A DNA stretch of 64,000 bases, taken from Saccostrea cucullata. Its lineage: Eukaryota. Numbering within the stretch: position 1 is the stretch's first letter; every line of letters begins with the position of its first letter. The stretch is taken from contig NW_026934212.1 of assembly GCF_032062105.1 (NCBI RefSeq), forward strand, positions 682,001 to 746,000. The letters run 5' to 3'. This document shows, piece by piece, positions 13,301 through 49,437 of the stretch. The notes beneath the pieces were generated by a model. The model was not told the origin of the DNA. It saw only the letters and a program-made list of their open reading frames with translations, and did not search any database. The position numbers and the translations under genes were made by a program.

Positions 13301-16300
13301 AGATTGAAGAGGGATTTAACAAGGCAAATAGCAAACTCATACAAAAGAAATTTCCAATAATAAATCGTGATCCATATGTTGTTACCCTGTAATCTACAGA
13401 TATAAGGCATACAGCAATATAACACTATAGAGAAAAGGATTTCAAATGTCTGGGTCAGGGGGTTAAAACTGATTTCTGAGACTTTTCATCTTTAATGTAC
13501 AATGCATGTGGTCATCGTAAAAATTTCCCCATATATGAACTGTATAGGACTTAAGGTTTTGAAATACCCATTCTAACTGTTTTTCTAGAAACAAATGGAG
13601 GAAATTAAATAACAATATTTCCATTTGTTTTCTCTGTGATAATTCTTTGAAAGTTAAGTCAGTTGATTTCTTGATTATTCAACCGGAATGTAAATTTTGG
13701 CAAGCAAAAGGTCAGGAGCTAAGAAGGCCTGGTATTAATTTATGCCTTCGCCTGTTAGGCAAATTATCCCACATTTCCAACTATCATTGATGCCCTGGCA
13801 TACCCAGTAATTCCTTAAAATAACCCCATCATATGAGTAAGAATTTTGTATTCAACTTTGTCTGCATATGTTTTTTTAAGGAGAGTCTTGCATTGTATCT
13901 TTAATTACTCAAAATAGATTAGGATGTACATGTACTATTTCAGTGTTTGAAATAACCGTGCACCCAACCGCCCGAGAAGCACAAATTTTGTCATGGGCGA
14001 ACTGATTTGCACATATTGACGCCCGGCTGGACTTGTAAAATTTTCCATAAATTAAAATTCATATACATGTTATGATATATTTGATAAAACTCTCTCAAAT
14101 CAACTTATACATTGTATTACTGGTTACAAGGTGTAACAAGCAAACAGGTTGAATTCACCAGTCATGGATTGAATATATAGTGGGATGGCCCCATTCACAT
14201 TATTGCTAAAACAAACTTATAAAATACAATTATTTTTTTTTTCGGGCTAGTACATTTTTGACAGGGCTGACAACTTTCACTAGCAATCAGCCCTGCATGT
14301 CTAGCTGATTTTACAGTGTGTTTCAAACACTGACTATTTCATAATAAACTAGTTGGGGAGCTACATTTGACTAACACATCAAAAACAAACATAAAAATAC
14401 ACACAATTTTTTTTTAACTTTTGCTATATTGCAAGGAACTTTAATCTACAAACTAGCCATTATCACACTTTTTGAAAATGTCAACAAGAGGTCCATGGGC
14501 CATAGTGCTCACCTGAAAAACGTGTCTCTAATAAACAAAAGTAGCATTCATAGGAACTGTACTTTATATAATTCTAATCAAGATTTACAGTATCTAGTAC
14601 TTCTTGTCATCACTTTTCCCTATAATAGTCTTGATTAAGTGATTCTTGAGAAATATACTTGTACATACCCCTAATGTTCAAGTGAATGGGCTTCTATTTT
14701 TTTAAATTAATATGATCAATGCACATTTCATACACACTTAAATTTTCTGATAGCAATTAAAAGAATTAATTGATGAACTAGATTCTACAAATAAATATTG
14801 CAATCTATAATTAAAATGTGATTATGCAGTGATCTTGATATCAAATTTATATGTGCATGTACCTGAGTGAATATTACATGCCAATACAATTGAGTATGAG
14901 CAGTGCTTTAGTAAGTTTTTATGGACAAAAAGTATTTGTTAATATGCTCTAAAGAAAATGGCATATGTTAGTAAGTCTTATGTAAAACTACAACTGAATG
15001 TATACTTTATTAACGATTTTTTTTTGTTTGTTTTTCTTGCCTACAGAGAAAGAAAGCAATTACTTGTACTTATGAAAACAGCAAAAACATGTGTAAGCGT
15101 AAATTTCTACTACATATATCACTGTGACCTATACAATATCTGCACCTAGCTTTTTACCTCCTCATAAAACTCAATAAATTCATCACAAAAACAAGTGTCA
15201 GCCTGAAATGGTTCACAATTTTTCAATGTTAGAGAAAAATACCTAGAAAAGAAATGAAGTTCTGAATTTAAATTTATTTCCTCTAATGTTTTTTACAACA
15301 ATATTGCAAGTTCTAATTAACTGAATAAATAACTAATATCCTGGGCCATATAAGTAAATGTTCATAGAAAAACACACAGCTGTTTAAACATATTTGCATT
15401 AATAATTTCCATAAGACAAACAATTTCATGCTTATAAAGAGTTATCCCCCTTGTGAAAACTTGAAATCCAAAGTCTGAGTAGTGAGATAAGAATACTTAT
15501 AAGAACACCTATTTAAGGTGGTACGTACCATGTCCATTCTGTCCTGAGCACAGATAATGGGAGGCTCCTTAAACATCTTCTTACTTCCCAGGTTTTCCTG
15601 TCCAAAGTCCCATTCCTCTTTGAGGTATTCATCATTTAGTTTCTTGGCAAGACGGGCATCATAGTGTGAAAGGAGCTGCTCAAAGTCAGCCAGCTATAAA
15701 GTAAAATCATGGAGTGCTACATGTATAAACTAACTGTATAACTTTGTAGATGGAATGGTAGCATGCAATAAGCTTCACAAAGTCAGATGTATGGCTACAA
15801 AAATTATTTTGGATATATGATTTTAGGATAAAATGATTTAGGACACTTTTATGATGAGAAGATATGATAAAGACTGAACAAAAAATAAATCTACACATTA
15901 TTCTGTTTTTCTCGTTTACTTAGTGCTCATCACAGGCCTACAAACATTTTTTCCTTTGTCACTGGGTACAGGGGAATATCAAGACCCTGAACCCTCTTAA
16001 ACATGATAAACATGTACTGTATAAGTAGAATTTTTAGCAAGGATTTAATTTTGGCATTATTAGCGAGGGTGCTGACATCGCTAAAATTGATTATCACTAA
16101 AAATCAATTGCGTATCATTTCTTATAGCTTCTTTAGTTAGCATTTAAAAAATCGCTAAAATTGCGTCTCGCTACAATTAAAACACCAGTTCTTTGGTAGA
16201 AATCGCTAAATTTGCATCTCGCTAAAATTTCCACTTATACGGTATGTATACCATGCTATTGAACCCCTCCCTACCTTATATAGATCTTTGTCCTTCCCCT

Positions 16301-18049
16301 GTGGTGCTGTGTCCTCCTCGGGCTTATAGTCCTTGTATGTCCCACACCTGAAATGAGGCAATTCCTCCAAACATTCAGAAATTTCATACAATCCTGTCTC
16401 TGGAATTTTACCCTTCTCTCGAAAAATTATATGAAAATTCTTGAAAAAATCGAACTGTAATATTTCTTTAACATTTATCTTTTTAGGCTTTAGGCGTGTT
16501 CTGTGCATTTTCTCATGAAAAATGTGGGAAACATATGATTATACTGAAGTAAAAGAAACATTTATAACAAAGAACCATAACAAAAACTAGAAGAGGCATT
16601 GTCTTAAAGATTGGTATCTAAGTTAAAGCTGAATGGGTGTAAACATAATGATAGCATCAACAGTTGTTAAATAGCAAACTTGTCGGACTTCAAAAAATAC
16701 ATGTATATATACTCAATATTGATGATGGAAATCAATTTGTACACTGATAATGTCAATCTAAACTTCTCCAAGTATGACATTTTTCTAGCAGTATCTGCTT
16801 TTGTAAAGAAGAAATAAGCTGCATTGATATGCAACTTGATCAACATGCAATCTTTCAAGCTTGAAATGACTTGTAAGACTTATTATGAAATACAAGAGAA
16901 ACCACAAGTCTCTGATGAGACTGTAGCTCCACTGATTTGTTCCTTACACTTGCATACTATAGTAGGAATGTTGATTTCTGTAAGAGAAGTAACAAAACTC
17001 TTAAATCAAACAGAATTTAGGATGAGAATCTTATTATAGTCTAAATGTTTTTCCAATCATTTCAGATATTTTAAAATCTTTTTCGGATGGTTTGACAGAT
17101 TTCATTATAATTAAAATGATAAAGATTTTACTGGACTTTGATGAGACAAGTTACTTTTCTTGATACAATCAGATAGGAAAAAGAGAATTTTAAAAATTGT
17201 TAGAGACAGCTGTGACACATTTATATTAAATAAAATCAAAATGGATGCATAGATCTTAATTAAAGAAGTAGTTTTGATGAAGTTTTCATTTGCACCTGCT
17301 TTAATTAAATCACAGAGAGACTGCAGATGAAAAAGCATTTAAAAAGTATATGCACTAAAACCATATCAAGAGCATGCTTCAAAATTTAAAACTACATTTG
17401 CACCTGAGTATTGTGCTCAAACAATTAATAAACCAGAGGCCATAAATTCACAATTTACAATTTTGAAAGAGCATCATTGCTTATATAATTATTAAAGCAT
17501 GCTTACTCAATTTACTTAATTTAACAAAGAGAAAATGCAATTACCCAGTTGTATGAACCCATGGGCCACATACATGTTTTTCAAAATTTTGCAAATTTTA
17601 TTATAAAATGGTTGATTAATACCAAAGAGCAGATTTCAAAGCATTAATTCATTTTCAGACTATGTAACCCCCCTCCCCCTCTGACCCTGGGGGCATAAAA
17701 AAAACACTTTGCTAGATGTATCTTTCTTCATCATAAATATATATATACTTGGATCATTGGCATAAAACCCAGAAGCAAAGGAAAATATTTTAAAAGAATT
17801 AATGTATTTTACTATATAATCAATAGAGCCCCGCCCTAACACCAGAATTAATATTTTGGAAATCTTTCATCACAAAATAGTTATTTAATACCCAGAAGCA
17901 GAGAAGAAGATTTTCAAAGAATAAATGCATTTTCACTATATAAACAATAGAGCCCCGCCCTAACAAACCCCTGAATAAAATGCACAATTTTGTAGGAGGC
18001 ACTCTTATTATAACTATGTGCTTAGTTAGTATATTTAATACCCAGGAGC

Positions 18050-18083
<34 letters not shown>

Positions 18084-21000
18084 CACTATATAATCTATAG
18101 AGCCCCACCCAAGCACTAGAACCCCTGACCCTGGGGCCATGAATTTCACAATTTTGGTAGAGGACTCAATGCTCATTACATTCATGCCAACAGTTTGCCT
18201 GCTTGATGTCCATGAGTAAAGATGAAGATTTTTAAAGATTGCAATAATTTTAGTGGTTTTGGCCCCACCCCTCAGGCCTCAGGGGGGCGGGGACCATGAA
18301 ATTCACAATTTTTGTTCCCCTCCACCCATAGATGCTGTATACCAAATTTGGTTGAAATTGGTTCAGTGGTTTCAGAGAAGAAGCTGAAAATGTTCAAATG
18401 TTAACACATGACACACGACGCACGACACACAACGCACGACACACGACGCACGACGACGGACGAAAACGGATAGCTCTTTAATCATAGTTCAAAATTTAGC
18501 TATCTCAGATTTTATTTTATTCAGACTATAAGAGAGCAAGGGGATAAATGCATGTATTACTATTGAAATATTTTAAAATATTAAACACACAGACTGATGG
18601 ACATAAAAACATTACACGTAATGCTGTTTTAGGAATTGTCCAGAAATGTCATAAAGAGTATATCTCTCTTAAAAAATAACTACATCTATGTATGTAAATA
18701 GTGGGTGGGAATTAATTCTCAAGTAATTTTTGAGATGGCAAAATATCTCTGCTTTGTGTTTATCTTCAAAATTATCGATTTAGAATCCATATTTTCAAGA
18801 GTATATTTCTAATGTTTGCACTCTCTAATCATAGTTCAAAATAGCATCACACCAAAACCTTGAGCTAGGAGGCAACCTCGTTTGGATAACTGAATGCAAG
18901 TTTTATCCAAAAATGGTGTACAAGGATTCCAAATGAACCTTCACATGTTTTAACTTACCACAAGATAAGCTCAAGGTACTCAGATAACTGGATGCGAGTT
19001 TTGTCTTCAAAATGAACCTTCATATGTTTTAATCTGTGCATTAACTTCATAGGAGCAATGGATCGTCCACACATCTAAAAACACAAAGTTATGTCAAATT
19101 TAATATAGCTTGAAAGATGAAAGGTTTTCATATTGTATTAAGTCTGTAGCTATCACACAAGGGAATCTAATGAATACAATATAAGGGCTATAATAGTTTC
19201 TAGTCAAAAATCTTTTACTCTTGAGACCAAAGGTACAATAGGACCTATTGTCAATATGATTTAATTCAATGATACATGTGTCTGAAAATTGAGTAGAATA
19301 TGTGAATGCATGAACTTAATTTGGTTAATGATTTGAACAAACTAAAAATCTTCACATAGACCATACGATGATGCTTGAAATTTTAATCAATTTCATCAAT
19401 TGTAAATAATTTTTTTTTACAGAGTTCCAGTTTAGTTTGTTGTAGAAAAAAAGATTGATTATTGTTTAAAGTATAAAATGAGTAATATTTAAGCAAATTT
19501 TTTGGCAGAAAATAATTTAAACTGTTATAAAAGAAGACTTGATTAAACTTGCAATGAAAATGCAGGTCACTCTATACGCCACTACCAGGAAAGCAAACAT
19601 GCAAAAGACAAGTCTTATATATGTACTGTTTGCAGAAGACATAAAGGTCAACCCCTTCCTTTGTATGATCTTGAAATTCCATAAATCAACAAAAGGTTGG
19701 TGATATCAAATATTAAATATAATCAAAAATGTCTCCTGCATTTGTGAAATTAATTATTTTTTGGTGATAGTAAATTGACAAATGGTCGTTGAGTCCTTGC
19801 AAAGTTTAACAACATTTGACACCATGTTTTCATAGCCATTATGATAGTTGTATTCTTTCTCTCTGAACTCGTTAATTTAACATACCAAATGAATTGATTT
19901 ATACTGGCCTTTCAAATTATAATGATTTATTGCTTATAATAAAATTAAGGGGAGAATAAAGGATTTAAAAATATCCTTCCACATAATGGATACAATAATA
20001 TACCTACTCCATCGCAAACAATTTCTAAAACCAACAAAGAGCACAATGGACGGAAATGGCCGGGTTTTAACTTGGGTAGAAAACAGTATTGAAGATATCA
20101 ATAAAATTTCATGTATTCCTATACCTTTTATGGATTGACAGCTAATTCACTTTTCTAAAATAAACTGGTGGCATTTGTTCATTTTTTTCTCAATAGATAC
20201 AAGTAGATTTTTCTTCTGTTTATATCCCCATACATGAAGATGAGATCACTAATACTTTTGCATTTGTGGTTTCAAATATATAAGATCTTTCCCCTTTTAG
20301 AAATTTAGCTACCAGCATCTATATAAAAAGCTTCAATGCTTTGAGGGCTTAAGTCTAAGTATTAACAATCAAGCTAGTATACACAATGAGATTTTTTCAA
20401 ATTTCAAAGTATATTTCCCCTTTTTAAAACCCAACCTCAAAAAAATGAAAATATTTAACAAAATTAACTAGAACTTACACCCCCTGCTAGTTTTTCCTTA
20501 ATAAAGATATGTATCAAACATAAAAATTTTTCTTCAGTGACCTTATAAGGGGCAAGGTCATGACACACCCTTGGGTCAGCAATCTTTGTGTGAAATGAAC
20601 CCCAAGTTTATCCATAGTATAAAACCAGTGAAAGCTGACCTTAATAAGCCAGGCAATCTTTGTGTGAAAGAAGAACCTACCAAGTTTATCCATAAGAAAG
20701 ATTTCGGACACAAATTATGAAATTTTTCTTCCAGTGACCTTGAACTTCCCCAAATGACCTTTCTATAACCAAACCTGGGCCACAATCTTTGTGTGAAATA
20801 TGATATTTATCCAAAATTAATGAATATGAAATTTTTCTTCCAGTGACCTTGAAATTATATATTGGGTCAAGGTCATGACACACCCTAGGTCAAAATGTGT
20901 TTAATGAAAAATCAGACACGATTAATATATATTTATGACAGACGGACAGACGGAAAAGGTGATGAATTTGAAATTATATATGAAACTGTATTTTCAAGAT

Positions 21001-24000
21001 TGCTTTACCATTAATTTTGTACATTTAAAATATGTTTTGAAAAAGCAGCTTAATACACAGTATAAATTCCTTTATTTCTTGGCTTATTAAGTGACATCCC
21101 TAATTTCTATTTTTGGGGGTTCCTACCACATCAGATCTAACACTGTCCACTTATAATTTGTCTAGAGCTTTATAAGGGCACTAACACTTCTATATTTACA
21201 TTCCTAATACATAAACTTCTTGTTGAAAGCTCAACAAATATTGGTTTGGGATAAAATAAACACCCATAATAAATTCAACAACAATCACTTATAAGATACA
21301 CTGTGTACCCAGTACACTTAGCCCTTTGTGATTTAAGAGAGCACATATTTGTCAGTGTCCAAAAGATTTTTTTTCCGCAGTTTAATTCAATTGAAGCTAA
21401 ATGCCTTTTCTGATTCCACGAGCTAGAGAACCCTGCGATCCTATATATATACTATAGACTGACTTCTCAGTCAAAATAAGAAAATTAAATTACACAAGAG
21501 CATCTTCAGATCAATTATGCCTTTGAGGGTCTTATTAATATTTTCTTTACCCTCCAATTATGACGCACTTTAAAGTCAGATATCAAATTACGAAAAAACC
21601 AATGAAAGAAGCATTTGATCTTAGTGAAGAATACAGCATTTACAAAACTCACGATAGATAATGTAAAGATAATATCAAACTTTTATCTGACAAGTAAAAA
21701 TGGATCATTACCTCTCAAATATCTGGTCATGAAAAAATCGATGTGTCAAAGAATTTTGTTCTCGGTGTACAAATATGTGGAAGAGGATGCACTCACAAAC
21801 TATGAGTAAATTCTTAACAGATATCTTGGTCTGTGCAAATGTATGGAATGATCTCATCTCAAGAGGGTGAATTATAACTGTTTGGACTGTCATAAATTTG
21901 TACCAAAAAAATCTTTAACAAAGAAATGCAAATATCTGCACAGTGATTACATAATATGTATTATAGATATTGAACTACAGAATCTTCTCCAATCTTGTTT
22001 AATTAGTTCTTTGGTGTTAAACTGTCACTCAAACAGTCCATAAATGAAACCAGGCCTGAAATAAATGTACAATTCTATTTGTTTTCTTGCAGAACGTGTG
22101 CCGAGACAATTGTTTAAACAATAATGTGGAAATTCTTGATATCCCATCAAAAAAATATGACAAATTAAAGAAAATACTTTAAAACAAAATGAATACACAC
22201 CAACATGAGAAGCTTACTGAATAGACCAATCAGAATATTATTGAAATCTAAAATAATGGAATTCCAAAATAGTGATTTGACCTTCTCAACAGGGGCAGAC
22301 TAAGAAAACAGACAAATTTAATTAAATCGAGAAAAAATATAAACAGGTGATAAGCTTTGCATAACTGCCATACAAGGGACTTAATCACCATGCACCCTGC
22401 TGTTGGTATGAAGCAGGGACAGGAATTTCTATTAAATATCGCAGGTGACCATATCAATAACACACATGCATTTTCTGCTTGTCTTACAATCTCTTTTACA
22501 TACAAATTTCAAGTACCCCAGCCAGAAATATAAGAATTAACATGAATACGAGATTACGCTTTCTTAAACAATCATTTGCATTTGCATAGCAAGTTAATAC
22601 AAGGCTGATAACGGAAGAAAAGGGAAAAAAGTGAAAAATCAATCTTTTGAATTTACTTTAAGATTTTTTGACTTCAAACATTTCATTTACCAAAGACTTA
22701 ATGAAAATCCTCAATACCTGCAATAGATTTAACAGTTCAGAAGACATTTTTATACATAAACAGAAAGACACCAAAGCCATATTTTTATCAATATTAAAAT
22801 GAAATCCTACAGCATTGTACAAGGATTAAGAACTTATTGACATTTTTCTGTTTGAAGTTATTGAATGCTCAGATAATTGAAATGATTCTTTTGACAATTT
22901 ATCAACAAAGTTTGATTCTAAGGATGAAGGCAAAGATTAAAAACTAAAGACCATATTTTCATTGTAGAGATACAAACCCCATAGAAACATTTAAACAAAG
23001 TAAAGAAAAACTTAATTCATGTCAGTTTTCCTTTTAGAGAATAATGTATTAATTCTGAGCAATGCACTATGTTGTCAAGCAATTAATTCATAAAAAATGA
23101 TGATTGTCACAGTTAATCAATACAAAGATTCAGCTTTTTCAATATTTGGAATATTTTATTTCTTTGGTACTGATTTATATTGGATAAAGTCTGAAAGTAA
23201 ATAATTTATTTTATTGTTTTTGTTCTACCACAAACAACTACAATATAGAGCTGCTGCTGCAATTACAAACCTTTTAATAAAGTCATTGGATCAGTGTTAG
23301 ATTCCTACTGGTCTACCTTACTAGTAGGATCTAATAAGTAGCTTCTAAGTAGAACTGAGAAGGATCTAACCAGAACTTAGCACTAGGATCTAGCCAAACC
23401 TTAGTAGGATCTAACCAGACCTTAGTAGGATCTAACCAGACCTTAGTAGGATCTAACCAGACCTTAGTAGGATCTAACCAGACCTTAGTAGGATCTAACC
23501 AGACCTTAGTAGGATCTAACCAGACCTTAGTAGGATCTAACCAGACCTTAGTAGGATCTAACTAGACCTTAGTAGGATCTAACCAGACCTTAGTAGGATC
23601 TAACCAGACCTTAGTAGGATCTAACCAGACCTTAGCAGGATCTAACCAGATCTTTGTAGGATATAACCAGACCATAGTAGGATCTAAACAGATCTTTGTA
23701 GGATCTAACAAGAACTGAGTAGGATCTAAGCAGACATTAGAAGGGTTTAACCAGACATTAGTAAGATCTAAGCAGACCTTAGTAAGATATAAGCAGACCT
23801 AAGTAGGATCTAACCAAAACTGAGTAGTATCTAAGCAGACCTAAGTAAGATCTAAGTAGAACTGAGTAGGATTTAAGTAGACCTTAGCAGGATCTCAGCA
23901 AAACTGAGTAGGATCTAACCAGATGTTAGTAGGATCTAACCAGACCTTAGTAGGATTTAAGCAGACCTTAGTAGGATCTTACCAGACCTTTGTAGGATTT

Positions 24001-27000
24001 AAGCAGAACTGAGTAGGATCTGAGCAGACCTTAGTAAGATCTAATCATAACCTACCTTGATACTACTGAGTAGGATCTCTTGGTCAATCAAAAGTCCCTT
24101 CATGTCAAACTGTTCAAAGGCCTGGTATGCCACTCTGATGTTATAGAGCTAACCAGAACTAAACAGTATATACACTGTATACAAAAGTACAATTACTTGT
24201 GAAAATGGACATTTGGATAACATACAACAGTTATACACAAAAAGTATAGATCATTAAAGAAACACAACTTATCATGATATAGTCTTTTTAGCTTAGTTTA
24301 CTCAGTTACAATTATTGCAATTTTTCTATTTCAGTTTTGAAATGTGTGTAGAGACTGTATTCTTTATTAAACAGTGATCTGATGAAAAAATGGAACACCA
24401 GACAAAAATCAAACTAAGGGATCATCCATAGATAGAATCTAAGACACTATACATAAAATAAACCAACTGAAAAGATTAATGAAAAAGTCAAAACTCTCAT
24501 CTATAGATGACAATGTCATTTAATTTAAAGCCCTTTTTCCATGAAATCATAATATTTGTCTAGATCATGAAATTTCTTGTAAATTAAGACTTATGGCACC
24601 TACTTAGTATGTTTAATAAGGGAGTAAAGTAATTAAAGCCCTGTTAATATTTGTCTTGTTCATAAGATACATTGTAAAATAATCCTCTTTGACATCAACT
24701 CAGTTTATATACTAAAGGTGTGAAGTGTTAGATTGAAGACTTATTGGTGACTTAGCACACTTCAAATATGAGTTGGGTAAACTTCAGGTCATTTCATGCA
24801 ATAAAATCAATGCAGATTAACTCTGAGCTAAGATAACCCGGATTCACTACTACATGTAGTGTACTAAGTAATGTTGCAGTAAGAATTAATTGCAGTGGAT
24901 TCAATATTTCAGGCGACAAGACCATAAACTGAGAATCCTAAATGATGGCTATATACATCATCACTTCATCAAAATGTCATATGGTGCATACAATATTATG
25001 CTAATTCACAAGAAAAGTTGTATATCCGGGGTTTTTTTTGAGTGTTGGAAATTTTGCAAAAAGGGGGTAAATTTTTACAGTTTTTATTTTGTGTAATTGA
25101 TTTTTTTTTTTAAAAATGGTAGTGTGTTTATGTCACAGTATAGCTGACATAATTTCTGCCTGTTTTATATTTTGCAAATAAAAAATGATCACAGAAAAAG
25201 TGAAAAATAGATCATTGCGAAAAAAACAAACGAATATACAGTAAGACAATTAATCAAGGACATAAAATATTGTACATCTAGACATTTTATAATTTATCTA
25301 ATAGCAGACATGGACAGTAACCATACTAAAGATGACTTTGCATACTTAGATACATGTAGCAGAATGACTGAGAAAGTACAGACACTTACACTGACGATAA
25401 AATAACTTAAAAAGTTCAGTCACCTAATTTGATGGCTGAATGACTGAGGAAGTGATGGCCCAGACACTTTTAAAAGTGATGGCTGAAGGACTAAGAAAGT
25501 GATTGTCAAGACACAACATGATGGGTGAATACCTGAAAAATACAGACATTTACCTGATGGATGAATATCTGAAAAAAAGAGAGACACTTACGTGATGGCT
25601 GAATGACTCAGGAAGTACAGACTTTTCCTGACCACATTCATGTTCCAGTCTCCGGAGTGGAGATTACAGGTTCTGTGGAGTGCCCTCTCCAGCAGGCGAT
25701 GGTCCACCATCTTGTAGGACTCCTAAAAATAAATAACATGGGTAATTAAAGATTAGAAAGCTCAACAATATTAACTAATATATGTAAGGTTAGGTCTCAT
25801 AGTGTGTTATCCTTAAAGCTTTTGATCCAGGTAACACTGAATGGACCTGTTCCAAAACGCCAACTGTTCAGTTTAAAAGAGAAATACACTCCTGATTCAG
25901 GTACAAAATCTGAAGCCGGCCTGTTAGCTACTGTACATGGTTAAATGCAACATCTGTGTAAGTAATGTTTAGGTAAGGCTAACAGTTCCTTGGAAACTTG
26001 CTCCAAAATAAATCTGTTTAATTCAGTAGAAAATTTAAATCAGACATAGCATATAAGCATGGTTGGTAGTGTGTACCCCTAAATTGTCAACTTCCAACAA
26101 GTTAGGTCAGGCAAGGCCATTAAATTCATGATAATGGATCTGCTCCAAAAACTTTCACCTGTTCAATCACCTGTAAAATATCTAATTGGTAAAATCCATG
26201 CAGCATCCATGCAAGTTTGGTCAGAGTAGATCATAAAGTTACATGGAAATGGACCTCCTCCAAAAAGAAAGGTTCAGTCAGATAGACTACATATGAATAT
26301 CAAATATTCTACACTTTGTCTAGGTGATGGACATCTGAATTCTTGGCTTCTGTCTTATAATGTTTCTGCTTTATGTTTTTACAGCATTACCTTGAGACTT
26401 AGGCCATGTTCTTCAATGACCAACTCCGACCCGTTGACATTCTTCTTAAACAGGTCAACTGGGTACTGCAAGACAATAAAAACATTGTTACAAGGAATTT
26501 CAGAATAAATATAACATTGTTAAGAAAACAACATATCTGTCCTTACTATATGAATTATGTACATGTATACATTATACAACTACAAGTATTAGATATTGTT
26601 ACACGACTAGAAATTCAGTGGAGAATTAATTCTCAAGAGGGTGTTCTATCTGATGGATATCCGAGTTTCACTAAAATTTCATTATATTAAAATAAAGAGG
26701 AATGATGAATTTTATAAATCCTTTAAAAAAAGGAATCTGTAAGCAGGGCAGAAAAATGGGCCCATGGCAACATCAGAGAGGGGCCAGATGCCAAGGAGAA
26801 TAAAGCATCCCTTGTTGATAAGTCACACCTTACAGGAGCCAATTGAAATTGACAATATTTTTTTTCAAAAATAGATTTAAAAAAAATAAACTTAATGAAA
26901 AATCTTTAAACAACAGGACATTTATAATTATCTTTCCTATTTTCAAAAGTGCAACTTTACACAATTTAACAGTTGAAGGTCACTTCTGCACATTGCATTG

Positions 27001-40100: not shown

Positions 40101-43100
40101 GAAGGGCCTTCTCTGGCATCTAATAACATAAAGACACAAAAGTACAGGAAAGGAAAAAATAATGCTAATTGCTATAATGCATTTGAAATGTTGTTTTTGT
40201 GCATACGAAAACATGCACAATGAAAATTCAGCATTTAAAAAAAAACCATCTGGTTGTACACAACCTTACTGTCTTTCAACATTCTCAACTTATTTAAAAA
40301 GTAGACTGATCAGGATCAAAAAACTACTGAAGCACAATATTTTTATTTCTAAAAAATTCTCACCCTTCCATCAGTGACTTTCCTCTGCATGGAGTCGTAG
40401 TCCAGCAGTTTATCAAACCTCTTCTGTATCACTTTGTTTGGGGCCTCAAACAGGGATGTCAGTCTGTTCAAAGGGGAGGTAACCAGGTCACGAACTGTCT
40501 CTTGCTAAAATTATCAAACATTAATACATTTTAGTATTTATTCTAATTTATCAGGTCATCAAAATTGAAATCTGACTGAAATATACAAAATTTTAGCACT
40601 TTTTTTTTATTGACCATTGTTGGTTTGTTTTTTTTTTTTACAACAAGACAGCAGAGTAAAACCTCTACATACAAATGTGGGTAGATGCTTCCTATCCAGA
40701 TTTTCCTGGGCCTCCTGGTATTTCTCCATTTCTGCGTTACTCTGTCGATCATCATAAAAATCGGCCAGGTCGGCCACCACACACTCATGGCAAGACACTG
40801 ACTCCTACATAAACAAAAAATATACCAGTCAACTCAATTGATATGGAATTAAGAGATTTGATGTTTTATTATACTGTTTATACATGTTTGTGCCTGTTTT
40901 TTTTAGATAACAAAAAAATTAATAAAATGAGCTTGGTACCTGTAAATGGTCCATGTATATCTGTGTGTTTCTTATAAAGACTTTCACCATTTTCTCCATT
41001 TGTCTGAACTTTGCCTCCTCTCTATCAAAGTCCTCATCCTTGATCTGCCAAAAATACACAAAATTAAGCTTCCCATACAATCACATCTTTAGACATTTTT
41101 CTTATTTCTACAAAACATTCATACAAACAATGCCTCAGTTATAAAACTTGTGCACAGCTACATACACCTACCAGCAGAAGTCCCAGATTGGTACTAATTC
41201 GACCTTTGAACCTGCTGCCTTTTTTCTTTATTGTATGGAAGCTCAATTTGGCAAGTTTGTCTCCAAAAGTCTCATCTGAAACTTTCTTATATTTGAACAC
41301 TGTAAAACACAAAATCATAATTTTAAGTTTCATTTCCCGCTGACATTGTATCAAATACATGTATAAATGTACAAATTACAATAGAAAATGAATATCTGAT
41401 TGTCTGACCTAGATCCTTTCTGCGTTTGTATTCATTGATGGCTGATGCTACATCTGTCATGGCATTGATGGCTGTCAGAATTTCTTTTTTGTCTGGGTGA
41501 TCATCCTCTGTTGCCTGTAAGTCAATAATAAAATGAAAACATCAATAGAATATCAAACTCTGATCAAAAACAAGTAAGGTACTAAGGAAACCAGACAGAC
41601 CTCAACATATACATGTACTAGCATATACTGTTTTGAATAAACTTTGTACTTATTAAATGTAGCTACCAGCATGTTCAAAATTTAGCACATATTGTACATC
41701 ATAATTTTACCAACACAAACATGACTTACAACTGTTGGTATTTTGTTTAATTATCACACATAAGTCAATAAATATTTTTTAAAGATCATGCATTTTACTA
41801 ACTAAATCATCAAGAAAGGGGTTCAATAAAAATTTCTCTAAAATCAGTATTGAGTATGGTAGGAGAATGAATCTTATTAAGTTTGTAGGTGACCTTGAAG
41901 AGTTCGTTGAGCAGCAGTGGGTATTTGAGGATCCTCTGGACTGGCTTAATGAGGAGAGCCCCGAGATCAAACACCACAGTCTTCTGTCGGAGTTTGTCCA
42001 GCATCTTATTGATGTACACCATGATGGACTCACTCTCCTCATACTGGAATTATACATGGCATGAATTAGTGCAAACGGTTAGCAATTTTACATGTAGGAA
42101 ATCACATTTAAAGTAACTGACACTAAGCATCATCCAAAACTGATTGGCATATAAAACATCAAATACTGTCAGTAAAACATGCTTACAGTGAACACACATA
42201 ACTTATAAAGTATTTGGAAATCCCAACATTTTGCTTTAAGCATGGCTTACTGTTTCAATCTAGGTTAAATGAGCTACATTTGACCTGTTTATTTACCTTT
42301 TCAAGCAGTGTGATGACTTCATCATGGTTACGGCAGTATGGAGCAAAGGCAGTTTTCATGTCTTCTGATAGCACCACAAAACATACACCTACAAGAATGT
42401 CAAATATGTGAAAAATGAATAAATACAATCAATGGATTTTGAATCAAAGAGTCCTTACAGATAAATCATAAGTATGCATTTTCAGGTCAATATATATGTA
42501 CAGCAGCTGGCTATATGCCTTATAATGCTTTGCTACACTGTAAATCTATTTACCTATGACTTGTTCCTCGAAGTCCTTCCCCTGTACGGCCCCCTCCAGG
42601 GCACTCAGTAATCTCTGTGATATGTCTGCTACGTCCTCAATGTTCCCCATCAACACGGTCAGATCCACCTCAGGATGCTGGCAAATTTCAAATGAGACAG
42701 TGTAAATATATCTACATGTCATATCTAGTTGCATATTAAAAATATTAACTTCTTATAGATACTATTCACCATGTAAACTTTACCTTTCAGCCATGAGAGA
42801 TGCTTACATTAATGATCCTGAACAAGCCCTCCCTCACCCCTTAATGAAATTTTTTTACGTCTTCCTGAACAACTCATTATCCCACTCTAAATAATTTCCT
42901 TGAGGAGCTTTCAGTTACCCTCTTCTTCTTACCTTTTCTGCCCCAGAAGACAGGAATGTCTCTACACACAGACCCAGACTGTGCTGGAAATCCTTCTACC
43001 TACCTTTTCTGCCCCGGGAGACAGGAAGGTCTCTATACAGAGACCCAGACTGTGCTGGAAGTCCTTCTCTGTCTGGATCAGTTCCTCTATCACCTTCCCC

Positions 43101-46100
43101 CTCTTCTCTCTCCTCTTCTCCTTCATCTCCTCGGTCCTCTTCTTCTCCTCCTCTCGCTGTCTCTCCTCCTCCTCCTGCCTCCTCCTCTCTGCCTCTCTCT
43201 GAGCCTCCAAATCCCCCTCCTCAGGGCACAGCACCACCAGGTTCTCTGTCAAAATCATGAGTAAATCTCTTATCGTTACTACAAGATTTTAAAAAATGTT
43301 TTCTACATTGTACTTTTTAAGTGTGGTGAGTTTTCCAACAATTGACACTAAGAGTTAAGCATTTCAAAGCTTGAAAATTCATTTTTAGTTCCTCGCGCTA
43401 TTAATTGAGAAGGGTTTATACTCACTCCTGAGTTCGCTCAACTCAGCATTAAGACCACTAATGTTGTCTGTGTAAAACTCAATGTTTTCTTTTATTTCTT
43501 CATTATCTTCACTTCCTTGTAGTGTTCTTTCTAGCTCAGTCCTGGATTTCTCACAGTTCTAAAAGAGAGTTCAATAATTGTCAAATACCTATTTCACAAC
43601 AAAATATCTTCTATCAATTTACATATAAAGCACTGCTACTCACGTCAACGTCCATTTCTAGGTCTTTGATCTTTTTTCTGAGGTCAGCCACAGCCACAGA
43701 ATGAGCCTCAGCTAAAATAAAAAATAAACACTCAACTTATAAAAATGAGGCTTGAATTTTCATTTCAATCTTAATTTTAGAGTAACAAGAATTTTGATTT
43801 TCACAGCAGGCAGATTCTTTAACAAGAGGCCTGGCCCCACATTCTCCCAGACAATATGTTTTGAATCTGAATCTACAATACCTCAGAGAGCTTTCTCTCA
43901 TGTTTCATCTTTTCTGATTCAGTGGTTGTTGAGTAAAAACTTTTCAAAATTTACTATTTTTTTTAATTACCTCCCTTGCAAGAGGACGAGGCCTTTCAAT
44001 TTAATAAAAATGAATTCCTTTTACCCAAGGATTCATGCTGATTCAACAACAAAATATACAAATGCATTCTAAAGAGTTTCTAACAGTACAGGACTTAATT
44101 TTGGTAATGATCACTTCACACTTTCATTTCACTTAAATTTCATTTGCTCTGGTTATCATCAACTGATCAATATTCAATATTTAACTAATTCCCAAACGTA
44201 TGCTAATTGCTTGGTATGTATATTTGTGCCAGAAAATTAAATTGGGAAAAAAATATAAATACACGCATAAAATATTTTAAAAACAATCCTGATTGATTAT
44301 TGAGGAAAACCCTTTAAAAAACAAAAACAAAAAAATTAAAATTTCATGAATAACCAAAAAACATACAGAACCAAAGAGGAAACTTGTGAAATTACAGAGA
44401 TAACATACTGCAATAAAACAGACAAGAGACAGCCAAACCTGTAGACTAATCTTCCTTGTTGTCTATACCAATAATAAAATTACATCTGAACTGACAAAAT
44501 TCCACAAGTTCTCCCAAATGTTAACATCGACCTTCACTAAATGTTCTTACCATATACCGGTAGTAACTTTTGATTCAAAAGATTTAATGCACATGTATAA
44601 TGAAGGTTAAATATTTTTCCACCGACCTTCACTAAATTTTCAATCCATAGTAACTTTTTTTAAAAATGGTTGGAAAGATTTAACTCACATGTATAATGAA
44701 GGTATCATATTAAAAAAAGGTAATTTAACATACTTCTAAATATTCTTATCACCATGCTCTCACTTCACAAGGTATTTTAAAACCTGCACTGTACATATAT
44801 ACAATAAAATGTTACATCATGATCTTTACCACACTGGCCTGATTTCTGATTGAAAACATCCACATAAAGTTACACTGTTGTTCCTAAATCTCAACCAAGT
44901 CTGTGGTGATTTCTTACTGACCAATTCAGTCAGCTTATCATTATTTATAACAGGGTACTGACAATTTATATCTCTAAGCAATATGCTGCACATCTTCCAG
45001 GTAGATAACTTTTGGGGTTTGTCAGTGATCACAAACAGCAAACATGTGAGACATTTGGGGGATCTAGACTTTGATATTGTGAATCATTTTTAATTTTTAA
45101 CTTTGTTGCTTTTCCATAATGGAACTCAATACTGCAAATTTTTCTTTGTGTAAAGGGGCACCAAAATAACAGACCATACCAAATCAAATATTGTTTAAAA
45201 TTTCATCGGAATTTGAAATTTTAAAATATGTCATCAAATCTACTTTATTTCATATCCCAATGACACTCTAAAAATGATACTCTACTTCAAAATTATCGAG
45301 GTTCTTTCAATGTTTATCACTATACAACAATACTGCATATCTTCAATTCAAAGTAGATACATGTAGCTCATTACCCGTTTGAATTTGATAGGGGGACCAC
45401 TTCAAACAAGCTAGTGTCCATATACTTTATGACAGCTAAACCAAGAATTTAACTCATGCCCGTATCTGACATTTTGAAATTGTTCTACCCAGGATACATG
45501 TAAAATAAGTTTGTTGGCAAAGATATAAATCAAGGCATATTTATTTATAAAATATTTACAACTTTACATGTTTGTGCAAAATCTTTTATTTGAACTTGGA
45601 TTTTCAGTCAGTATAACTGGAGGTCTTTTAAGGTATGCATTTGTTTCATCTTGTAGCAAATATGTTCTTTTGCAAAAAAATAACAATCTTCATGATTTTA
45701 TCAATCAAGGTGTTTTACCATATAAGTGGAAATTCTAGCGAGACACAAATTTAGTGGTTTCTACCTAAAATCTGGTATTTTATTTTTACCGAGAAGTAAT
45801 TTTAACGATTTTAAAATGCTAACTGTAAAAACTTTTACAAATAAAACGCAATTAATTTTTAGCAATATTCAATTTTAGCGATGTAAGCACCCTCGCTGAT
45901 AATGCCAAAATTAAATCCTCGCTAAAATTTTTACTTATATGGTAGATATCCTGGTAGCAAAACAACTCCACTAAAATGAGGAACTTTCATTCATTGTAAC
46001 ACAAAAAAAAACTGACCTTGTATATTTCCCAATATTCAATGAAAAGGGTGTAGATACCTAACTGTGATTACAGTATCTACCTTTATTTACCTGATAAAAG

Positions 46101-49100
46101 TCCTTACCTTTAAATGTATCCTCCAGATCAATAAGTCCCTCCCCAGGTCCCGGCTGAGCTGGTCCTGTGGATGATGGCTGTGGTCTTGTTGGCGCAGGGC
46201 GGGTTGGCATGGGTCGGGTTGGTGCGGGTCGAGAGGGAACGGGACAGGAAGGGGCGGGTCTGGATGGCCTTGTCCTGGGTGTCTGACCATTCTGTTTCAC
46301 ATGATTAGTATCGGTCACTTTTACGGGAATTAAAGGAACAGTCGGAGGTGCAGAGGCCAGTCGGGGGCCGGTAGGGCGGGGTGGGGGGTCTTTTTTGAGG
46401 GAGGGTGAACGATCAAACTGCTCAAATGACCTTTGTGGAATGGGAGGAGGTTTTCTCATGGAGGGGTAACTTTTTTTGGATGGAACTGGGTCCACAAAGA
46501 AGACTGAATTTCCTGTTGAAAATGTACCATGGAAGTCATCATTGGAAATTATTTTTTGATGTGCCGTGTCTTGAATTGGAAAATTTACAGAGTGTCTCTT
46601 TGGATCTGTTTTAATTAAATTTGAAGAACTAGAGGATTTGTTACTGGCTTGATCTCTTTTTAGTATTGGCTTGCCTGGGTGAGCTGGCTTATTGCCCATT
46701 TTCTCTTTGGCATCATCAGGTTTCACATCATTTTTTGCTTTGGTTAATTCACTTGATATTAAGTCATTTAATGATTTTGATGTATCTACATCACCAAAAG
46801 AAAATGTAGCTCTCCTGTTTTCAGTTTTGGTATCTGATACTGAACTAGACAATTCATTTGTGGACAGAGATTTTTGCAATGTGCTGCTAGATTCATCAGG
46901 GCTGTGAAGAACTTGGGCAGATGAAGACTTGAGAAGTGACGCCTCGCTGTCTTCGGTTTCTTTTACGGGATGTAATCTCGTTTTGTTTGGTAGATTGGGT
47001 TTGGGCGATAGGCTTGGTTTGGGTTTTGTTACAGGTTTAGGGTTCAGCTGAGGTTTAACTGGTAATACTGGCTTTTGCTCCAATGTAAAATTTATGCTTT
47101 GGCTCCCACTTTTCTCTTTAATATTACTTTTATGTATGTTTTGTTGAGATGTTTCAGGAGCTACATTGTGTTCTCTATGTTCTGTGGTATGATCACTTAT
47201 CGATAAACTTGGTTTTATGACTGGAACAGATGATATTTTGTCATCTATCGTTTTTTTCACTTTATCACTAGATGGTGTAACATGAAATTGGGTTTCAACA
47301 CTCAGTTCCTCTTTATCACTAACAATTTCACTACTTCCACCTTTAACTTCATGATTTCTGTAATCTGGAGCAGGAGACTGTAATGGACTATCATCAATAA
47401 TGTCAAGGAAAACCGTGGGAACTAATCCCGATTTCCCAGAATTCTCATTTAATGCCCTCACCCATTCGGTGTTCAGATACTCTAAAATCTTAACGGTGTC
47501 CCCTTCCGTCACAGTAAGGTCCTGGTCAGTTTCTGCAGTGAACGAAAACAAAACAAGTGCATACTGGTCCCTGCTCAAATTTTGTTCAACTCCATTAACA
47601 CAGCCATGAGATTTGTTCAATGTTTCCTCCACTGTTGAAAAATTCTGATTCTCATTTATATCTAGATCTTTATTTTTCACCTCTTGGTCAATTTCTGATG
47701 GTTCTTCATGATAACTCCTTGTCCCTTCTTCCTCAGAAGCATTTATCTCTGTTCTATTTATTGCCTCATTTTCAGAGAAAGCGTAAGGACAATCGACAAT
47801 AATGGACACAAAACATGTGGGGAACAGACCTATCCTCCCGTCAATCTCTCCCTCCATCCACTGGTCGTCCACATGTTGGACAAGGTACACAATCTCATTG
47901 GCATCAAAAGAAAGTTCATTGTCCGACTGACCTTCAAACCTGTACAAGGTCATGGCATATGGACTAACAGAGGAGTCCAGACTCTTCAAGTTCTCGCTGG
48001 TGTAGGCAGCACTTTGATCTGGTATAGTTAACTGTGATTGGCTATTTGGCACATCGTGTGATTCTGATTGGCTGACATCTCCTCCAACAGGCTGTCCATC
48101 ACTAACACTGCTATAATAAGACTGATCCAAAGAGAAGGATTTCTGAATGGAGGAGCTGGATTTTTTAGTGACCTGATGAGAGACTGGCCCCCCTCCCCCT
48201 GGTGCTGTGTCCTGTATCAGCTCCACACAGGAGGAAAGGAACATCCCCTTCTTACTTCCCAGCTCCCCATAATACCAATCTGAGTCTAGGATCTCAGTCA
48301 CAGTAATTATATCACCAGTCTTAAACCCCAGCTCCTCATCGAGCTGAGCCACCGAATCACACAGGGCCAGGGCAAACAGGGGCTCCGTCGAGTGGAGACT
48401 GTGGCTCCGTTCTTTTAGGGAGGGCAGTAGTTCCAGCTCCATGACATGGGTGACTGGAAAAATCCCCTTGCTGGACCCCAGCTGACCTTTCCACCAGTTG
48501 GCATCAATCTGGTGAGTTCCCAAGATAATAGCACCTACAAAGGGATTACAATGAATAGATATACATGATATTGAGGTATTCTCTGACAAAGGAATGCAAA
48601 ATGAACTCATCTTGCCATTTTGAGTAACCAAATTAATAAAAACACTTATGGTTTTCAGAATCCCTTTTCGTTCAAAACAAGTTACTATACTGTATACAGG
48701 GTTATTTTCGCCCCGTTTTATTTTTGCCCATTCACACCTAGAAAGTAGAAAGTATTTTCCCCTGTTTCAAATTCGCCCAATTTCAATTCTTTTTAAGAAA
48801 TCATACCGAGTTTCTTACAATCACCCCGTTTTATTTTCGCCTTCCTTTGAGTAGGGCGTATGGGGCGAAAATAAAACGGGGGCGAAAATTTTCCTGTATA
48901 CAGCAATGAAATTATATTTAATAATATCAGAACTGTCCCTAACAATCAAAATAGCATGGGACATTTAAAAAGTAGAAGGGGTTCTTAGGTTCCTCAATTA
49001 AGAGGGTAATGAGGAAGAAAAACAGAGTAATCGGGGGATAATGTTATTAAAAGTGGGGAAATGCCCTGACTCCCAAAATCTTAGGAACAACCTGACATAC

Positions 49101-49437
49101 ATATAGATTAAAATTACAAAAATATATAAACACTTAAGTTACACATTTATTTTTCACCTTTTCTAAATTCCAGATCACCATCTTGCTGAGCAGGGAAGTT
49201 TTCTACAGCACCAAACAATACCTGCCCCTCTTCTACTGCTGGTAAACTAAGGACCTCCACAAAGCTGGAGGGGAAGTTCCCCTCCCTCCCCCTTAACTGT
49301 CCGCAGTACCAGTTATCATCTATCACGCTGGTCACTCTAATGATGTCACCCTTAGACAGACTTATCTCCCTTGGATGGTTGGTTTCAAATGGATAAACAG
49401 CTCTAACATATTGACCTGACAAGTTTTCTACGCCCAT
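36969..49437 (-). CDS. DNMBP: Dynamin-binding protein / Tuba (SH3 repeats, RhoGEF DH, BAR, two C-terminal SH3)
   Basis: Exons 49437-49158, 48534-46108, 43711-43644, 43558-43426, 43245-43004, 42677-42554, 42388-42297, 42043-41894, 41514-41409, 41299-41172 (or -41166), 41044-40940, 40804-40673, 40504-40364, 40119-39934, [39422-39369], 38868-38701, 38407-38206, 38005-37629, 37148-36969 all splice in frame. DH motifs VIEELIQTEKDF and LLIKPVQRILKYPLLL; INEYKRRKDL; BAR IQKRFDKLLDYD and LNAQLLDELP; terminal SH3. Confidence 0.95.
37629..38005 (-). CDS. DNMBP: DNMBP exon, Ser-rich linker
   Basis: KGFIPSRLL..., phase 1->0. Confidence 0.88.
38206..38407 (-). CDS. DNMBP: DNMBP exon, penultimate SH3
   Basis: LYRVLQNY...KDPMGNKDRWFVDSG. 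Confidence 0.9.
39369..39422 (-). CDS. DNMBP: Candidate 54-nt in-frame cassette exon of DNMBP
   Basis: tttacag|AAA GTC...TCT ACT|gtaagt; KVTQHEIETKSQSPNIST; phase 0-0. Confidence 0.6.
39934..40119 (-). CDS. DNMBP: DNMBP exon, BAR domain
   Basis: DYDGLNAQLLDELPKL. Confidence 0.9.
41894..42043 (-). CDS. DNMBP: DNMBP exon, DH CR3
   Basis: DLGALLIKPVQRILKYPLLLNELFK. Confidence 0.92.
43004..43245 (-). CDS. DNMBP: DNMBP exon, coiled coil and DH start
   Basis: KRGKVIEELIQTEKDFQHSLGLC. Confidence 0.9.
43820..44045 (-). mobile_element. Fragment of a pearl-like element
   Basis: AACAAGAGGCC start and core-repeat remnant. Confidence 0.5.
45718..45942. mobile_element. MITE, inverted copy of the 16017-16242 family
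   Basis: TA|CCATATAAGTGGAAATT...ACTTATATGG|TA. Confidence 0.85.
46108..48534 (-). CDS. DNMBP: DNMBP large exon (SH3-2 to SH3-5, Pro-rich linker)
   Basis: 2427 nt, phase 1->1, within the 857-aa ORF. Confidence 0.92.
48690..48903. mobile_element. MITE (CTGTATACAGG...TTTTCGCCCCG TIRs)
   Basis: Long terminal inverted repeats; TA on the left, CA on the right. Confidence 0.8.
49158..49437 (-). CDS. DNMBP: DNMBP exon, SH3-1 and start of SH3-2
   Basis: tttcag|ATG GGC; YVRAVYPF...WYCG...GNFPSSFV. Confidence 0.9.

What the first reader, a model, noticed from the sequence alone, without database searches (positions are those of the whole stretch)
24056..24160. A single in-frame TAG in an otherwise intact 13-exon EF-hand-like gene, at the position of calmodulin's conserved Gln
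Seen: the exons splice in frame for 979 codons if the exon starts at the acceptor gtttag (24159-24160), which gives ...HSAIT-SG*LYNIRVAYQAFE. Known: calmodulin reads LTEEQIAEFKEAFSLFD, so the TAG aligns with Q, consistent with CAG>TAG. Inference: a nonsense allele (oysters are known for high genetic load), a leaky UAG-C readthrough site, or a consensus error. The 12-mer around the stop (CTAACCAGAACT, + strand) also occurs in the adjacent 21-bp array, so gene conversion or read mis-mapping from the array could have produced it. The TAG could instead be the real acceptor, but I found no phase 2->0 exon to restore the frame.
Basis: partly seen in the sequence, partly recalled or inferred. Interest (0 to 1): 0.75.

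Follow-up and report, generated by a model that had tools for sequence, protein, structure and literature searches.

The report
Repeat-derived stop codon in oyster gene
In this assembly a conserved mollusc gene carries a premature stop inside a 6-9-letter patch that matches a neighbouring repeat, and RNA from the same species lacks those letters, so it is a broken allele or an assembly slip and not a recoding signal.

Summary
The TAG is real in the window (minus strand, 24151-24149). It is the only internal stop in a 13-exon, 978-codon gene.

A spliced contig of the same species (X1) and an RNA contig of a relative (X9) both join 25592 to 24150 with exactly 8 letters between.

Both alignments, and a relative's DNA contig (X6), stop at 24150. 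X1 therefore does not carry the window's letters at 24151-24158, so it has no TAG.

Relatives read F-E-E or close variants where the window reads S-G-stop. None of 19 sequences has a stop there. The stop aligns with Glu/Asp/Gly, not with calmodulin's Gln.

The first 8 exon letters differ from a relative's genomic copy at 5 of 8 places. The rest of the gene shows pN/pS 0.07.

The changed letters make a 12-mer identical to the 21-bp array 105 bp away, and that array is unique to this locus in the genome.

- **Best reading (0.5):** a real null allele on one haplotype, made by a short patch copied from the array.
- **Main rival (0.3):** an assembly or consensus artefact.
- **Unlikely:** readthrough, or TAG serving as the acceptor.

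The raw reads were too thin to decide (about 3 reads). This is an ordinary kind of event with a neat origin.

The parts
7699..29919 (-). Whole coding span of the gene: 13 exons, 978 codons plus a terminal TAG. It is an uncharacterised mollusc protein with an N-terminal EF-hand-like region.
   Evidence: Exon table with AG/GT boundaries and phases. Colinear with P0014, 986 aa. Relatives.
25592..25722 (-). Exon 4 (131 nt, ends in phase 2, donor CAC|GTAAGT).
   Evidence: The X1 contig piece covers 25592-25683 with 0 differences. The X9 piece covers 25590-25721.
24056..24158 (-). Exon 5 (103 nt), the focal exon. Its own codons read SG*LYNIRVAYQAFEQFDMKGLLIDQEILLSSIK.
   Evidence: Spliced contigs X1 and X9. 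The next exon (MCGRSIAPMK...) is seen as the loose end of X9 at 24056.
24159..24160 (-). Acceptor AG of exon 5.
   Evidence: Both spliced contigs have exactly 8 letters between 25592 and 24150, which equals 24158-24151. The intron position and phase are the same in the relative L003.
24149..24151 (-). In-frame TAG, aligned with E/D/G of relatives.
   Evidence: 0 of 19 relatives have a stop here. The alignments of X1, X9 and X6 all end at 24150.
24149..24157 (-). Array-identical patch. The changed letters lie at 24151-24156. The identity with the array consensus runs at most over 24149-24157, and a rarer unit variant matches 24149-24160 exactly.
   Evidence: local alignment score 20, reached by 0 of 237 control windows. 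(5 of 8 first letters differ from L003).
23361..24044 (.). 21-bp minisatellite, 32.4 copies, in the intron just after exon 5's donor. It is the likely template of the patch.
   Evidence: Unique to this locus in G000 (13 of 13 matches). It holds 18 AAGGT donor-like sites.
24065..24077 (.). 13-mer at the 3' end of exon 5 that recurs exactly three times in the array. Here it codes the conserved ILLS.
   Evidence: 4 matches, 0 expected.

Best explanation
The assembled haplotype carries a null allele of a conserved, selected gene. A very short patch of 6-9 letters at the first three codons of exon 5 was overwritten with the motif of the 21-bp minisatellite that starts 12 bp after the same exon's donor. 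That turned F-E-E into S-G-stop in one event.

Shown:
- The splice pattern.
- The clustered change.
- The identity of the changed letters with the array.
- Constraint on the rest of the gene.
- A same-species transcript without these letters.

Inferred:
- The patch physically exists in an animal rather than only in the consensus.
- It arose by a templated event (short-tract conversion or a replication template switch using a nearby direct quasi-repeat).
- Its mRNA is lost to nonsense-mediated decay.
For: 1. Cluster. The window reads TTCTGGTTAG where the relative L003 reads ATTTGAGGAG. That is 5 of 8 differences before the shared AG, and the affected codons are all changed in meaning. Across 107 other codons in three exons pN is 0.045, pS 0.65 and pN/pS 0.069.
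2. Conservation. In 19 of 19 relatives the first residue is F or Y, and 0 of 19 have a stop at the third.
3. Template. There is an exact 12-mer shared with the array, and a 15-nt local match (13 identical) to the array consensus that scores above all 237 control windows. The array is 105 bp away, in the same orientation, and found nowhere else in the 1.17-Gb assembly. Stray reads from other loci therefore cannot have supplied the motif.
4. Other allele. X1 is the same species: it holds 0.77 of the sampled words of the last exon, with 0 differences in 92 nt of exon 4 and 1 in 53 nt of exon 5. Its contig is spliced 25592 / 8 letters / 24150, and its alignment is not extended over 24151-24158. 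A single mismatch would normally be bridged, so several of the 8 letters differ.
5. Two haplotypes. The raw reads of that sample show both letters at 24092: 2 reads with the relatives' C and 1 with the window's A. Two haplotypes, one window-like, are therefore present.
6. Young allele. There is no other defect in 978 codons.
7. Background. High loads of recessive deleterious alleles are reported for oysters (PMC5804265, passages seen). Short templated mutation clusters are a described class (PMC5453318, abstract seen).
Against: - No raw read was shown to carry the patch. X21 was read at about 6 in 100 of the run, giving about 3 reads over the exon, and nothing is listed at 24151-24158.
- The letters of the 8-nt stretch in X1 were not displayed, so 'not TAG' is an inference from where the alignment ends.
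- X1's contig has a depth of only 2.3.
- The assembly holds just one copy of the region, so the second haplotype cannot be read there.
- The copy is direct. The template-switch events characterised in the cited paper are mostly inverted.
- A 6-9-nt tract is far shorter than usual meiotic conversion tracts (recalled, not tested).
Confidence: 0.5

Rival explanations
1. Assembly or consensus artefact. The animal's DNA reads an F-E-E-type sequence, and the 6-9 wrong letters arose during consensus building or polishing next to a minisatellite.
For: - The only same-species sequence seen across the site (X1) does not match the window at 24151-24158.
- The change abuts a tandem array, a classic trouble spot.
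- The assembly is fragmented (23,869 contigs).
- The gene is otherwise perfect.
Against: - Consensus errors are usually single bases or indels. This is four to five substitutions that keep the length and reproduce a local motif exactly (recalled knowledge of error types).
- The array is unique to the locus and shares only 12-15 nt with the site. 150-nt reads from the array could hardly be laid here.
- The flanks on both sides are ordinary, and a relative's contig aligns at 24321-24432, so it is not a misjoin.
Confidence: 0.3
2. The TAG is decoded by leaky UAG-C readthrough or recoding, and the allele still makes full-length protein.
For: - TAG is followed by C.
- The downstream 880 codons are intact.
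- Another gene of this genome was noted earlier in the scan as a conserved leaky stop (s1-707147, not tested here).
Against: - There is no stop at this place in 0 of 19 relatives.
- The two residues before it are also damaged, including the F/Y found in 19 of 19.
- The same species has a transcript without these letters.
- Intact downstream codons are equally expected of a young null allele or an artefact.
Confidence: 0.03
3. Splicing avoids the stop. Either TAG is the real acceptor (exon starts at 24148) with a hidden exon restoring the frame, or exon 4 (131 nt) is skipped and exon 3, which ends in phase 0, joins 24148 in frame.
For: - ggttag|CTC is a usable acceptor.
- 131 + 10 nt is a multiple of 3, so skipping exon 4 and using 24148 would be in frame (arithmetic).
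Against: - Both spliced contigs (X1, X9) include exon 4 and 10 letters upstream of 24148.
- All 18 relatives' proteins contain exon 4 and the three residues.
- The relative's genomic acceptor sits at the same place and phase.
Confidence: 0.05
4. The gene is a pseudogene in this species.
For: There is an in-frame stop early in the protein (codon 98 of 978).
Against: - There is only one defect in 978 codons.
- pN/pS is 0.07 against a distant relative.
- A same-species spliced transcript lacks the patch.
Confidence: 0.03

Closest known systems
Segregating recessive null or deleterious alleles (high genetic load) in oysters and other marine bivalves (review PMC5804265; search listing and passages seen)
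   Same: A single disabling change sits in an otherwise constrained gene, with a second, apparently functional haplotype in the same species or sample.
   Different: That literature rests on segregation distortion and lethal equivalents. The review holds no occurrence of 'nonsense' or 'loss-of-function'. Here a specific molecular lesion is seen, but its frequency and effect are unknown.
Short template-switch or templated multinucleotide mutation clusters (Loytynoja and Goldman 2017, PMC5453318; abstract and outline seen)
   Same: Several substitutions within a few bases are explained at once by copying a nearby sequence, with length preserved. Such clusters are known to confuse mapping and variant calling.
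   Different: The events stressed there create inverted copies. Here the source motif lies in direct orientation in a minisatellite about 105-780 bp away, which is closer to a short-patch ectopic conversion between direct quasi-repeats (recalled concept, not tested).
EF-hand pair domains (calmodulin and troponin C lobes)
   Same: The predicted fold of residues 80-174 of the relative's protein P0028 aligns with calmodulin and troponin C lobes at Z 9.8-10.2, rmsd 1.9-3.0 A over 77-87 residues. All 50 listed entries contain EF-hand proteins. The three damaged codons open the first helix (H96-109).
   Different: No Pfam EF-hand model matches and there is no PDB sequence match. By eye, the loops (DMKGLLIDQ.., EDKTRIQLSE) lack the canonical acidic pattern, so calcium binding is doubtful.
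Programmed stop-codon readthrough
   Same: An in-frame UAG followed by C, with an open frame behind it.
   Different: The stop is not conserved (0 of 19), the neighbouring residues are damaged too, and a stop-free transcript exists in the species.

Membership tests
Mollusc orthologue group of Mercenaria LOC123536282 / Tegillarca KUTeg_022646 (uncharacterised protein) | Colinear similarity over the whole length, including the N-terminal conserved region and the C-terminal motifs | tested here: met
   tblastn of P0014, P0010 and P0007 on the window hits every exon in order. The N-terminal exons are 78-97% identical to P0014.
Mollusc orthologue group of Mercenaria LOC123536282 / Tegillarca KUTeg_022646 (uncharacterised protein) | Open reading frame through the F-E-E tripeptide | tested here: not met
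   The window reads S-G-stop. 19 of 19 relatives are open there.
EF-hand (calmodulin-like) domain | Paired helix-loop-helix fold | tested here: met
   AlphaFold model of P0028 with 12 sequences: pLDDT 74-85 over residues 10-170, mean 68.4. VIA-align Z up to 10.2. Foldseek's best E is only 0.13, but its top rows are EF-hand proteins.
EF-hand (calmodulin-like) domain | Match to a curated EF-hand sequence model | tested here: not met
   No EF-hand family at E up to 10 for 6 exon translations, or at E up to 1 for P0014, P0028, P0010 and P0015. Atlas feature hits to EF-hand clusters score only 0.90-0.91.
EF-hand (calmodulin-like) domain | Canonical 12-residue calcium-binding loop | tested here: inconclusive
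   By eye on the sequences the loops lack the usual acidic positions. No calcium-site predictor was run.
Programmed readthrough / recoding site | Stop conserved in relatives, with constraint downstream | tested here: not met
   0 of 19 relatives have a stop at this codon.
Templated (conversion-like / template-switch) mutation cluster | Several clustered changes that together reproduce a nearby sequence | tested here: met
Templated (conversion-like / template-switch) mutation cluster | Ancestral state known in the same species, and the derived state seen in raw reads | tested here: inconclusive
   X1 differs from the window at the patch, but its letters were not shown. X21 gave about 3 reads and no row at 24151-24158.
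Heterozygous null allele | Both alleles present in reads of one individual | tested here: inconclusive
   Both letters are seen at the nearby synonymous site 24092 (2 C, 1 A), but not at the patch itself.

The most novel reading that the evidence does not exclude
A locus-specific minisatellite that grew out of an exon's own 3' end and donor acts as a mutagenic template for that exon. A 6-9-nt patch copied from it across about 100 bp destroyed the first three codons of the exon in one step. The result is a segregating null allele of a gene kept under strong constraint across molluscs. If the donor-derived minisatellites that the scan noted elsewhere in this genome behave alike, they would be a recurrent local source of loss-of-function alleles, and so a part of the bivalve genetic load.
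Probability: 0.4. Interest if true: 0.45.

Novelty: new member of a known kind. Interest (0 to 1): 0.27.

Why it matters
It should not be called a pseudogene, a recoding case or an alternative splice.

For biology, if the patch is real it is a clean molecular example of how a null allele arises in a bivalve: a multi-base templated event from an adjacent repeat. It is also the kind of clustered variant that read mapping tends to miss.

If it is an artefact, it marks exon ends next to minisatellites as places where this assembly should not be trusted.

Tried and rejected
Tried without result:
- Pfam on six single-exon translations found no EF-hand.
- phmmer of the focal exon against PDB found 0.
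- A PDB profile search with the orthologue alignment found only low-complexity noise, Huntingtin polyQ.
- A search with exon 4 alone for short Logan peptides (24-75 aa), which might have shown X1's letters, found no candidate.
- The 90% clusters of P0014, P0016, P0017 and P0018 held no member from the window's species that I could recognise.
- The own assembly holds no second haplotig of the region (1 match).
- None of the relatives' loci L002-L006 holds the 21-bp unit. TRF on L004 found no such array. These contigs do not cover the intron next to exon 5's donor, so whether relatives have the array is unknown.
- Earlier scan notes near the locus were unrelated.

Considered and rejected:
- A micro-exon in the duplicated donor region 25519-25604. 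The first 'intron' would be 23 nt, and neither spliced contig shows it.
- Weaker phase-0 donors inside exon 4. The contigs use 25592.
- A misjoin through the array. Only 12-15 nt are array-like and the upstream intron is ordinary.
- A tandem duplication breakpoint, for the same reason.
- Reading the X21 depth bins as proof that a read spans the patch. I tried the arithmetic and it has several solutions, so I make no claim from it.
- The dip to 0.33 in bin 24166-24253. It is no more than chance at about 1.5-3x depth, since other unique bins are 0.

Limits:
- The letters of X1's and X9's 8-nt stretch were not among the rows printed (31 joints and 141 'letters between' rows were not shown).
- 76 rows of other letters were not shown.
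- Supplements of papers were not opened.
- The 8 oyster-like Logan proteins belong to two 90% clusters and are not independent.
- Proteins that do not cover the junction were left out of the tally of 19. These are P0001-P0006, P0008, P0009, P0011, and the genomic ORFs P0016, P0018, P0019 and P0022 that run into the intron.
- Each window exon was translated, searched or compared alone, and the N-terminal region was searched with natural database proteins (P0007, P0028, P0014) instead.

Full report
**What is there.** The gene lies on the minus strand. Around the finding it reads ...tatatactgtttag|T TCT GGT TAG CTC TAT AAC ATC AGA GTG GCA TAC CAG GCC TTT GAA..., and the exon ends ...ATC AAG|gtaggt at 24056. 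The upstream exon (25722-25592) ends ...GCC ATC AC|gtaagt, in phase 2.

I fixed all boundaries from tblastn of relatives and the sequence, then checked them exon by exon.
- There are 13 exons, and every internal boundary is AG...GT.
- The phases are consistent.
- The total is 2934 nt, which is 978 codons plus a terminal TAG.
- There is one internal stop, the focal TAG at codon 98.

The window has no N.

**Which gene.** No Pfam family matches the exons or full-length relatives. The last exon (545 aa) found relatives in bivalves: Mercenaria LOC123536282, Tegillarca KUTeg_022646 and Sinanodonta. The N-terminal part of the Tegillarca protein, and exon 4 alone, found more: scallops, a gastropod, and several unnamed Logan transcripts. 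One of the transcripts, P0014 (986 aa), is colinear with all 13 exons.

An AlphaFold model of the relative's 255-aa short form (P0028, 12 sequences) has pLDDT 74-85 over residues 10-170. Residues 80-174 align to calmodulin and troponin C lobes at Z 9.8-10.2, with rmsd 1.9-3.0 A over 77-87 residues, and all 50 listed entries contain EF-hand proteins. Foldseek E-values are weak, 0.13 at best. 'EF-hand-like' is therefore fair for the fold and unproven for calcium binding.

**The splice.** Read laying gave two spliced contigs.
- X1 is the same species. It holds 0.77 of the last exon's sampled words. Its record 1 (153 nt, depth 2.3) lies on 24098-24150 (1 difference) and on 25592-25683 (0 differences), with record letters 54-61, eight letters, on neither. 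X1 covers exons and repeats but not unique intron, so it behaves as RNA although its kind is only guessed.
- X9 is RNA of a relative, organism C. Its record 15 (669 nt) lies on 26441-26390, 25721-25590 and 24150-24056, and then runs into the next exon. Its loose end at 24056 reads, on the minus strand, as the MCGRSIAPMK exon at 19074. From 25592 to 24150 it too has 8 letters, the first two being G and T.

No junction at 24148 and no micro-exon is seen. A relative's genomic contig (L003) has the intron at the same codon position...ATCAC|GTGAGT...ttgtag|A TTT GAG GAG CTG TAC. Four genomic ORFs of relatives lose similarity right after the same codon (P0016, P0018, P0019, P0022).

**What the stop replaces.** I tallied the 18 proteins and the one genomic contig that cover the junction.
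- The tripeptides are FEE (13 sequences, 8 of which are near-identical oyster-like transcripts), FEG (2), FED (1), FQE (1), YED (1) and YTD (1).
- The first residue is F or Y in 19 of 19.
- The third is E in 14, D in 3 and G in 2, and a stop in 0.
- The window has S-G-stop.

The calmodulin-Gln alignment is not supported.

At the DNA level the first ten exon letters are TTCTGGTTAG in the window and ATTTGAGGAG in L003. Five of the eight letters before the shared AG differ, and the three codons are all changed in meaning. Over 107 other codons of exons 4, 5 and 6, compared with L003 and L004, pS is 0.65, pN is 0.045 and the ratio is 0.069. The gene is under strong constraint, and the defect is a tight multi-base cluster rather than a point mutation.

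**Where the letters come from.** The + strand 12-mer CTAACCAGAACT occurs exactly at 24149-24160 and at 23366-23377 in the 21-bp array. With one mismatch it occurs 14 more times, all in the array (16 matches against 0.37 expected).

A local alignment of the acceptor region to three consensus units gives AGTTCTGGTTAGCTC against AGGTCTGGTTAGATC, with 13 of 15 identical. Its score of 20 exceeds all 237 control windows from 24186-26600, whose maximum is 17. The changed letters (24151-24156) all lie inside the match.

The array (23361-24044, 32.4 copies) begins 12 bp after this exon's donor and is unique to this locus in the 1.17-Gb assembly (13 of 13 matches). It contains 18 AAGGT donor-like sites. 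It also shares an exact 13-mer with the exon's 3' end, which there codes the conserved ILLS. The array therefore seems to have grown from the exon-end and donor region.

**Is the stop real?** All three foreign alignments (X1, X9, X6) end at 24150, the last base before the T of TAG. A matching base would have extended them. X1, from the window's own species, therefore does not have T at 24151. Because 7 further matches would normally bridge one mismatch, it probably differs at several of the 8 letters, as an F-E-E-type sequence would.

The raw WGS reads of the same sample (X21) were read at about 6 in 100 and give only about 3 reads on the exon. Nothing is listed at the patch, so they neither confirm nor exclude it. 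They do show both letters at the synonymous site 24092: 2 reads with C, as in organism C, and 1 with the window's A. Two haplotypes, one of them window-like, exist in that sample. The assembly holds one copy of the region.

**Reading.**
- Most likely (0.5), the patch is a real allele on the assembled haplotype, made in one step by copying a few bases from the adjacent array. It would be a short-patch conversion or template switch between direct quasi-repeats. The class of clustered templated mutations is described in PMC5453318 (abstract seen). High loads of deleterious recessives in oysters are described in PMC5804265 (passages seen). The second haplotype would be functional and expressed.
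- A consensus artefact is the main rival (0.3). It would also explain X1, but it needs four to five length-preserving substitutions that happen to reproduce a motif found only in this locus.
- Readthrough, splicing around the stop and pseudogenisation are each unlikely, for the reasons given under rivals.

**Rule notes.** The spliced model was not joined or searched as a whole, and each exon was handled alone.

Noticed in passing
window 23361-24044 (and 24025-24090): The 21-bp minisatellite reads open on the minus strand as (LDPTKVW)n and holds 18 AAGGT donor-like sites. Its first units abut the real donor of exon 5, and its unit resembles the exon-end, donor and intron-start sequence. It exists nowhere else in the 1.17-Gb assembly. 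Earlier scan notes describe other 'minisatellites made of a splice donor' in this genome.
   Followed up: partly
window 25358-25604: The intron just after exon 4's donor holds decaying tandem copies of the exon's last codons plus the donor. TRF finds period 38 (2.3 copies) at 25519-25604 and period 23 at 25430-25503. A further copy reads KCLYFLSHSA at 25387-25358.
   Followed up: partly
window 15149-15292 (-): An alternative terminal exon ...ADTCFCDEFIEFYEEVKS-stop follows exon 8. Relatives' transcripts P0027 and P0029 (265 aa) end in the same peptide, so a short N-terminal-only isoform seems conserved.
   Followed up: partly
P0017 / P0026 (relatives' transcripts); window 15513-15635 (-): Two Logan transcripts of a relative switch, within exon 8, to another frame of the same exon (tail TMMPVLPRN..TSKRSG...). 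The window has the matching alternative-frame ORF. This could be a frameshifting splice variant or an error in those contigs.
   Followed up: no
window 36972-49527 (-): The upstream neighbour on the same strand is a multi-exon gene with SH3 domains (at least 4), a RhoGEF domain, a BAR domain (below Pfam's cut-off) and a C-terminal SH3. This is a dynamin-binding-protein/Tuba-like architecture (name recalled).
   Followed up: partly
window 26102-26277 and 25046-25221: Two intron stretches are high-copy repeats in this species and in the relative. Depth reaches about 480-fold per direction in the raw reads and 21,666 summed contig depth in X6, with many rearranged joints. They are probably transposon pieces.
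   Followed up: no
window 24092: A synonymous A/C polymorphism (CTT/CTG Leu). 2 of 3 raw reads of the same-species sample, and both contigs of the relative, have C, so the window's A is the derived letter.
   Followed up: no
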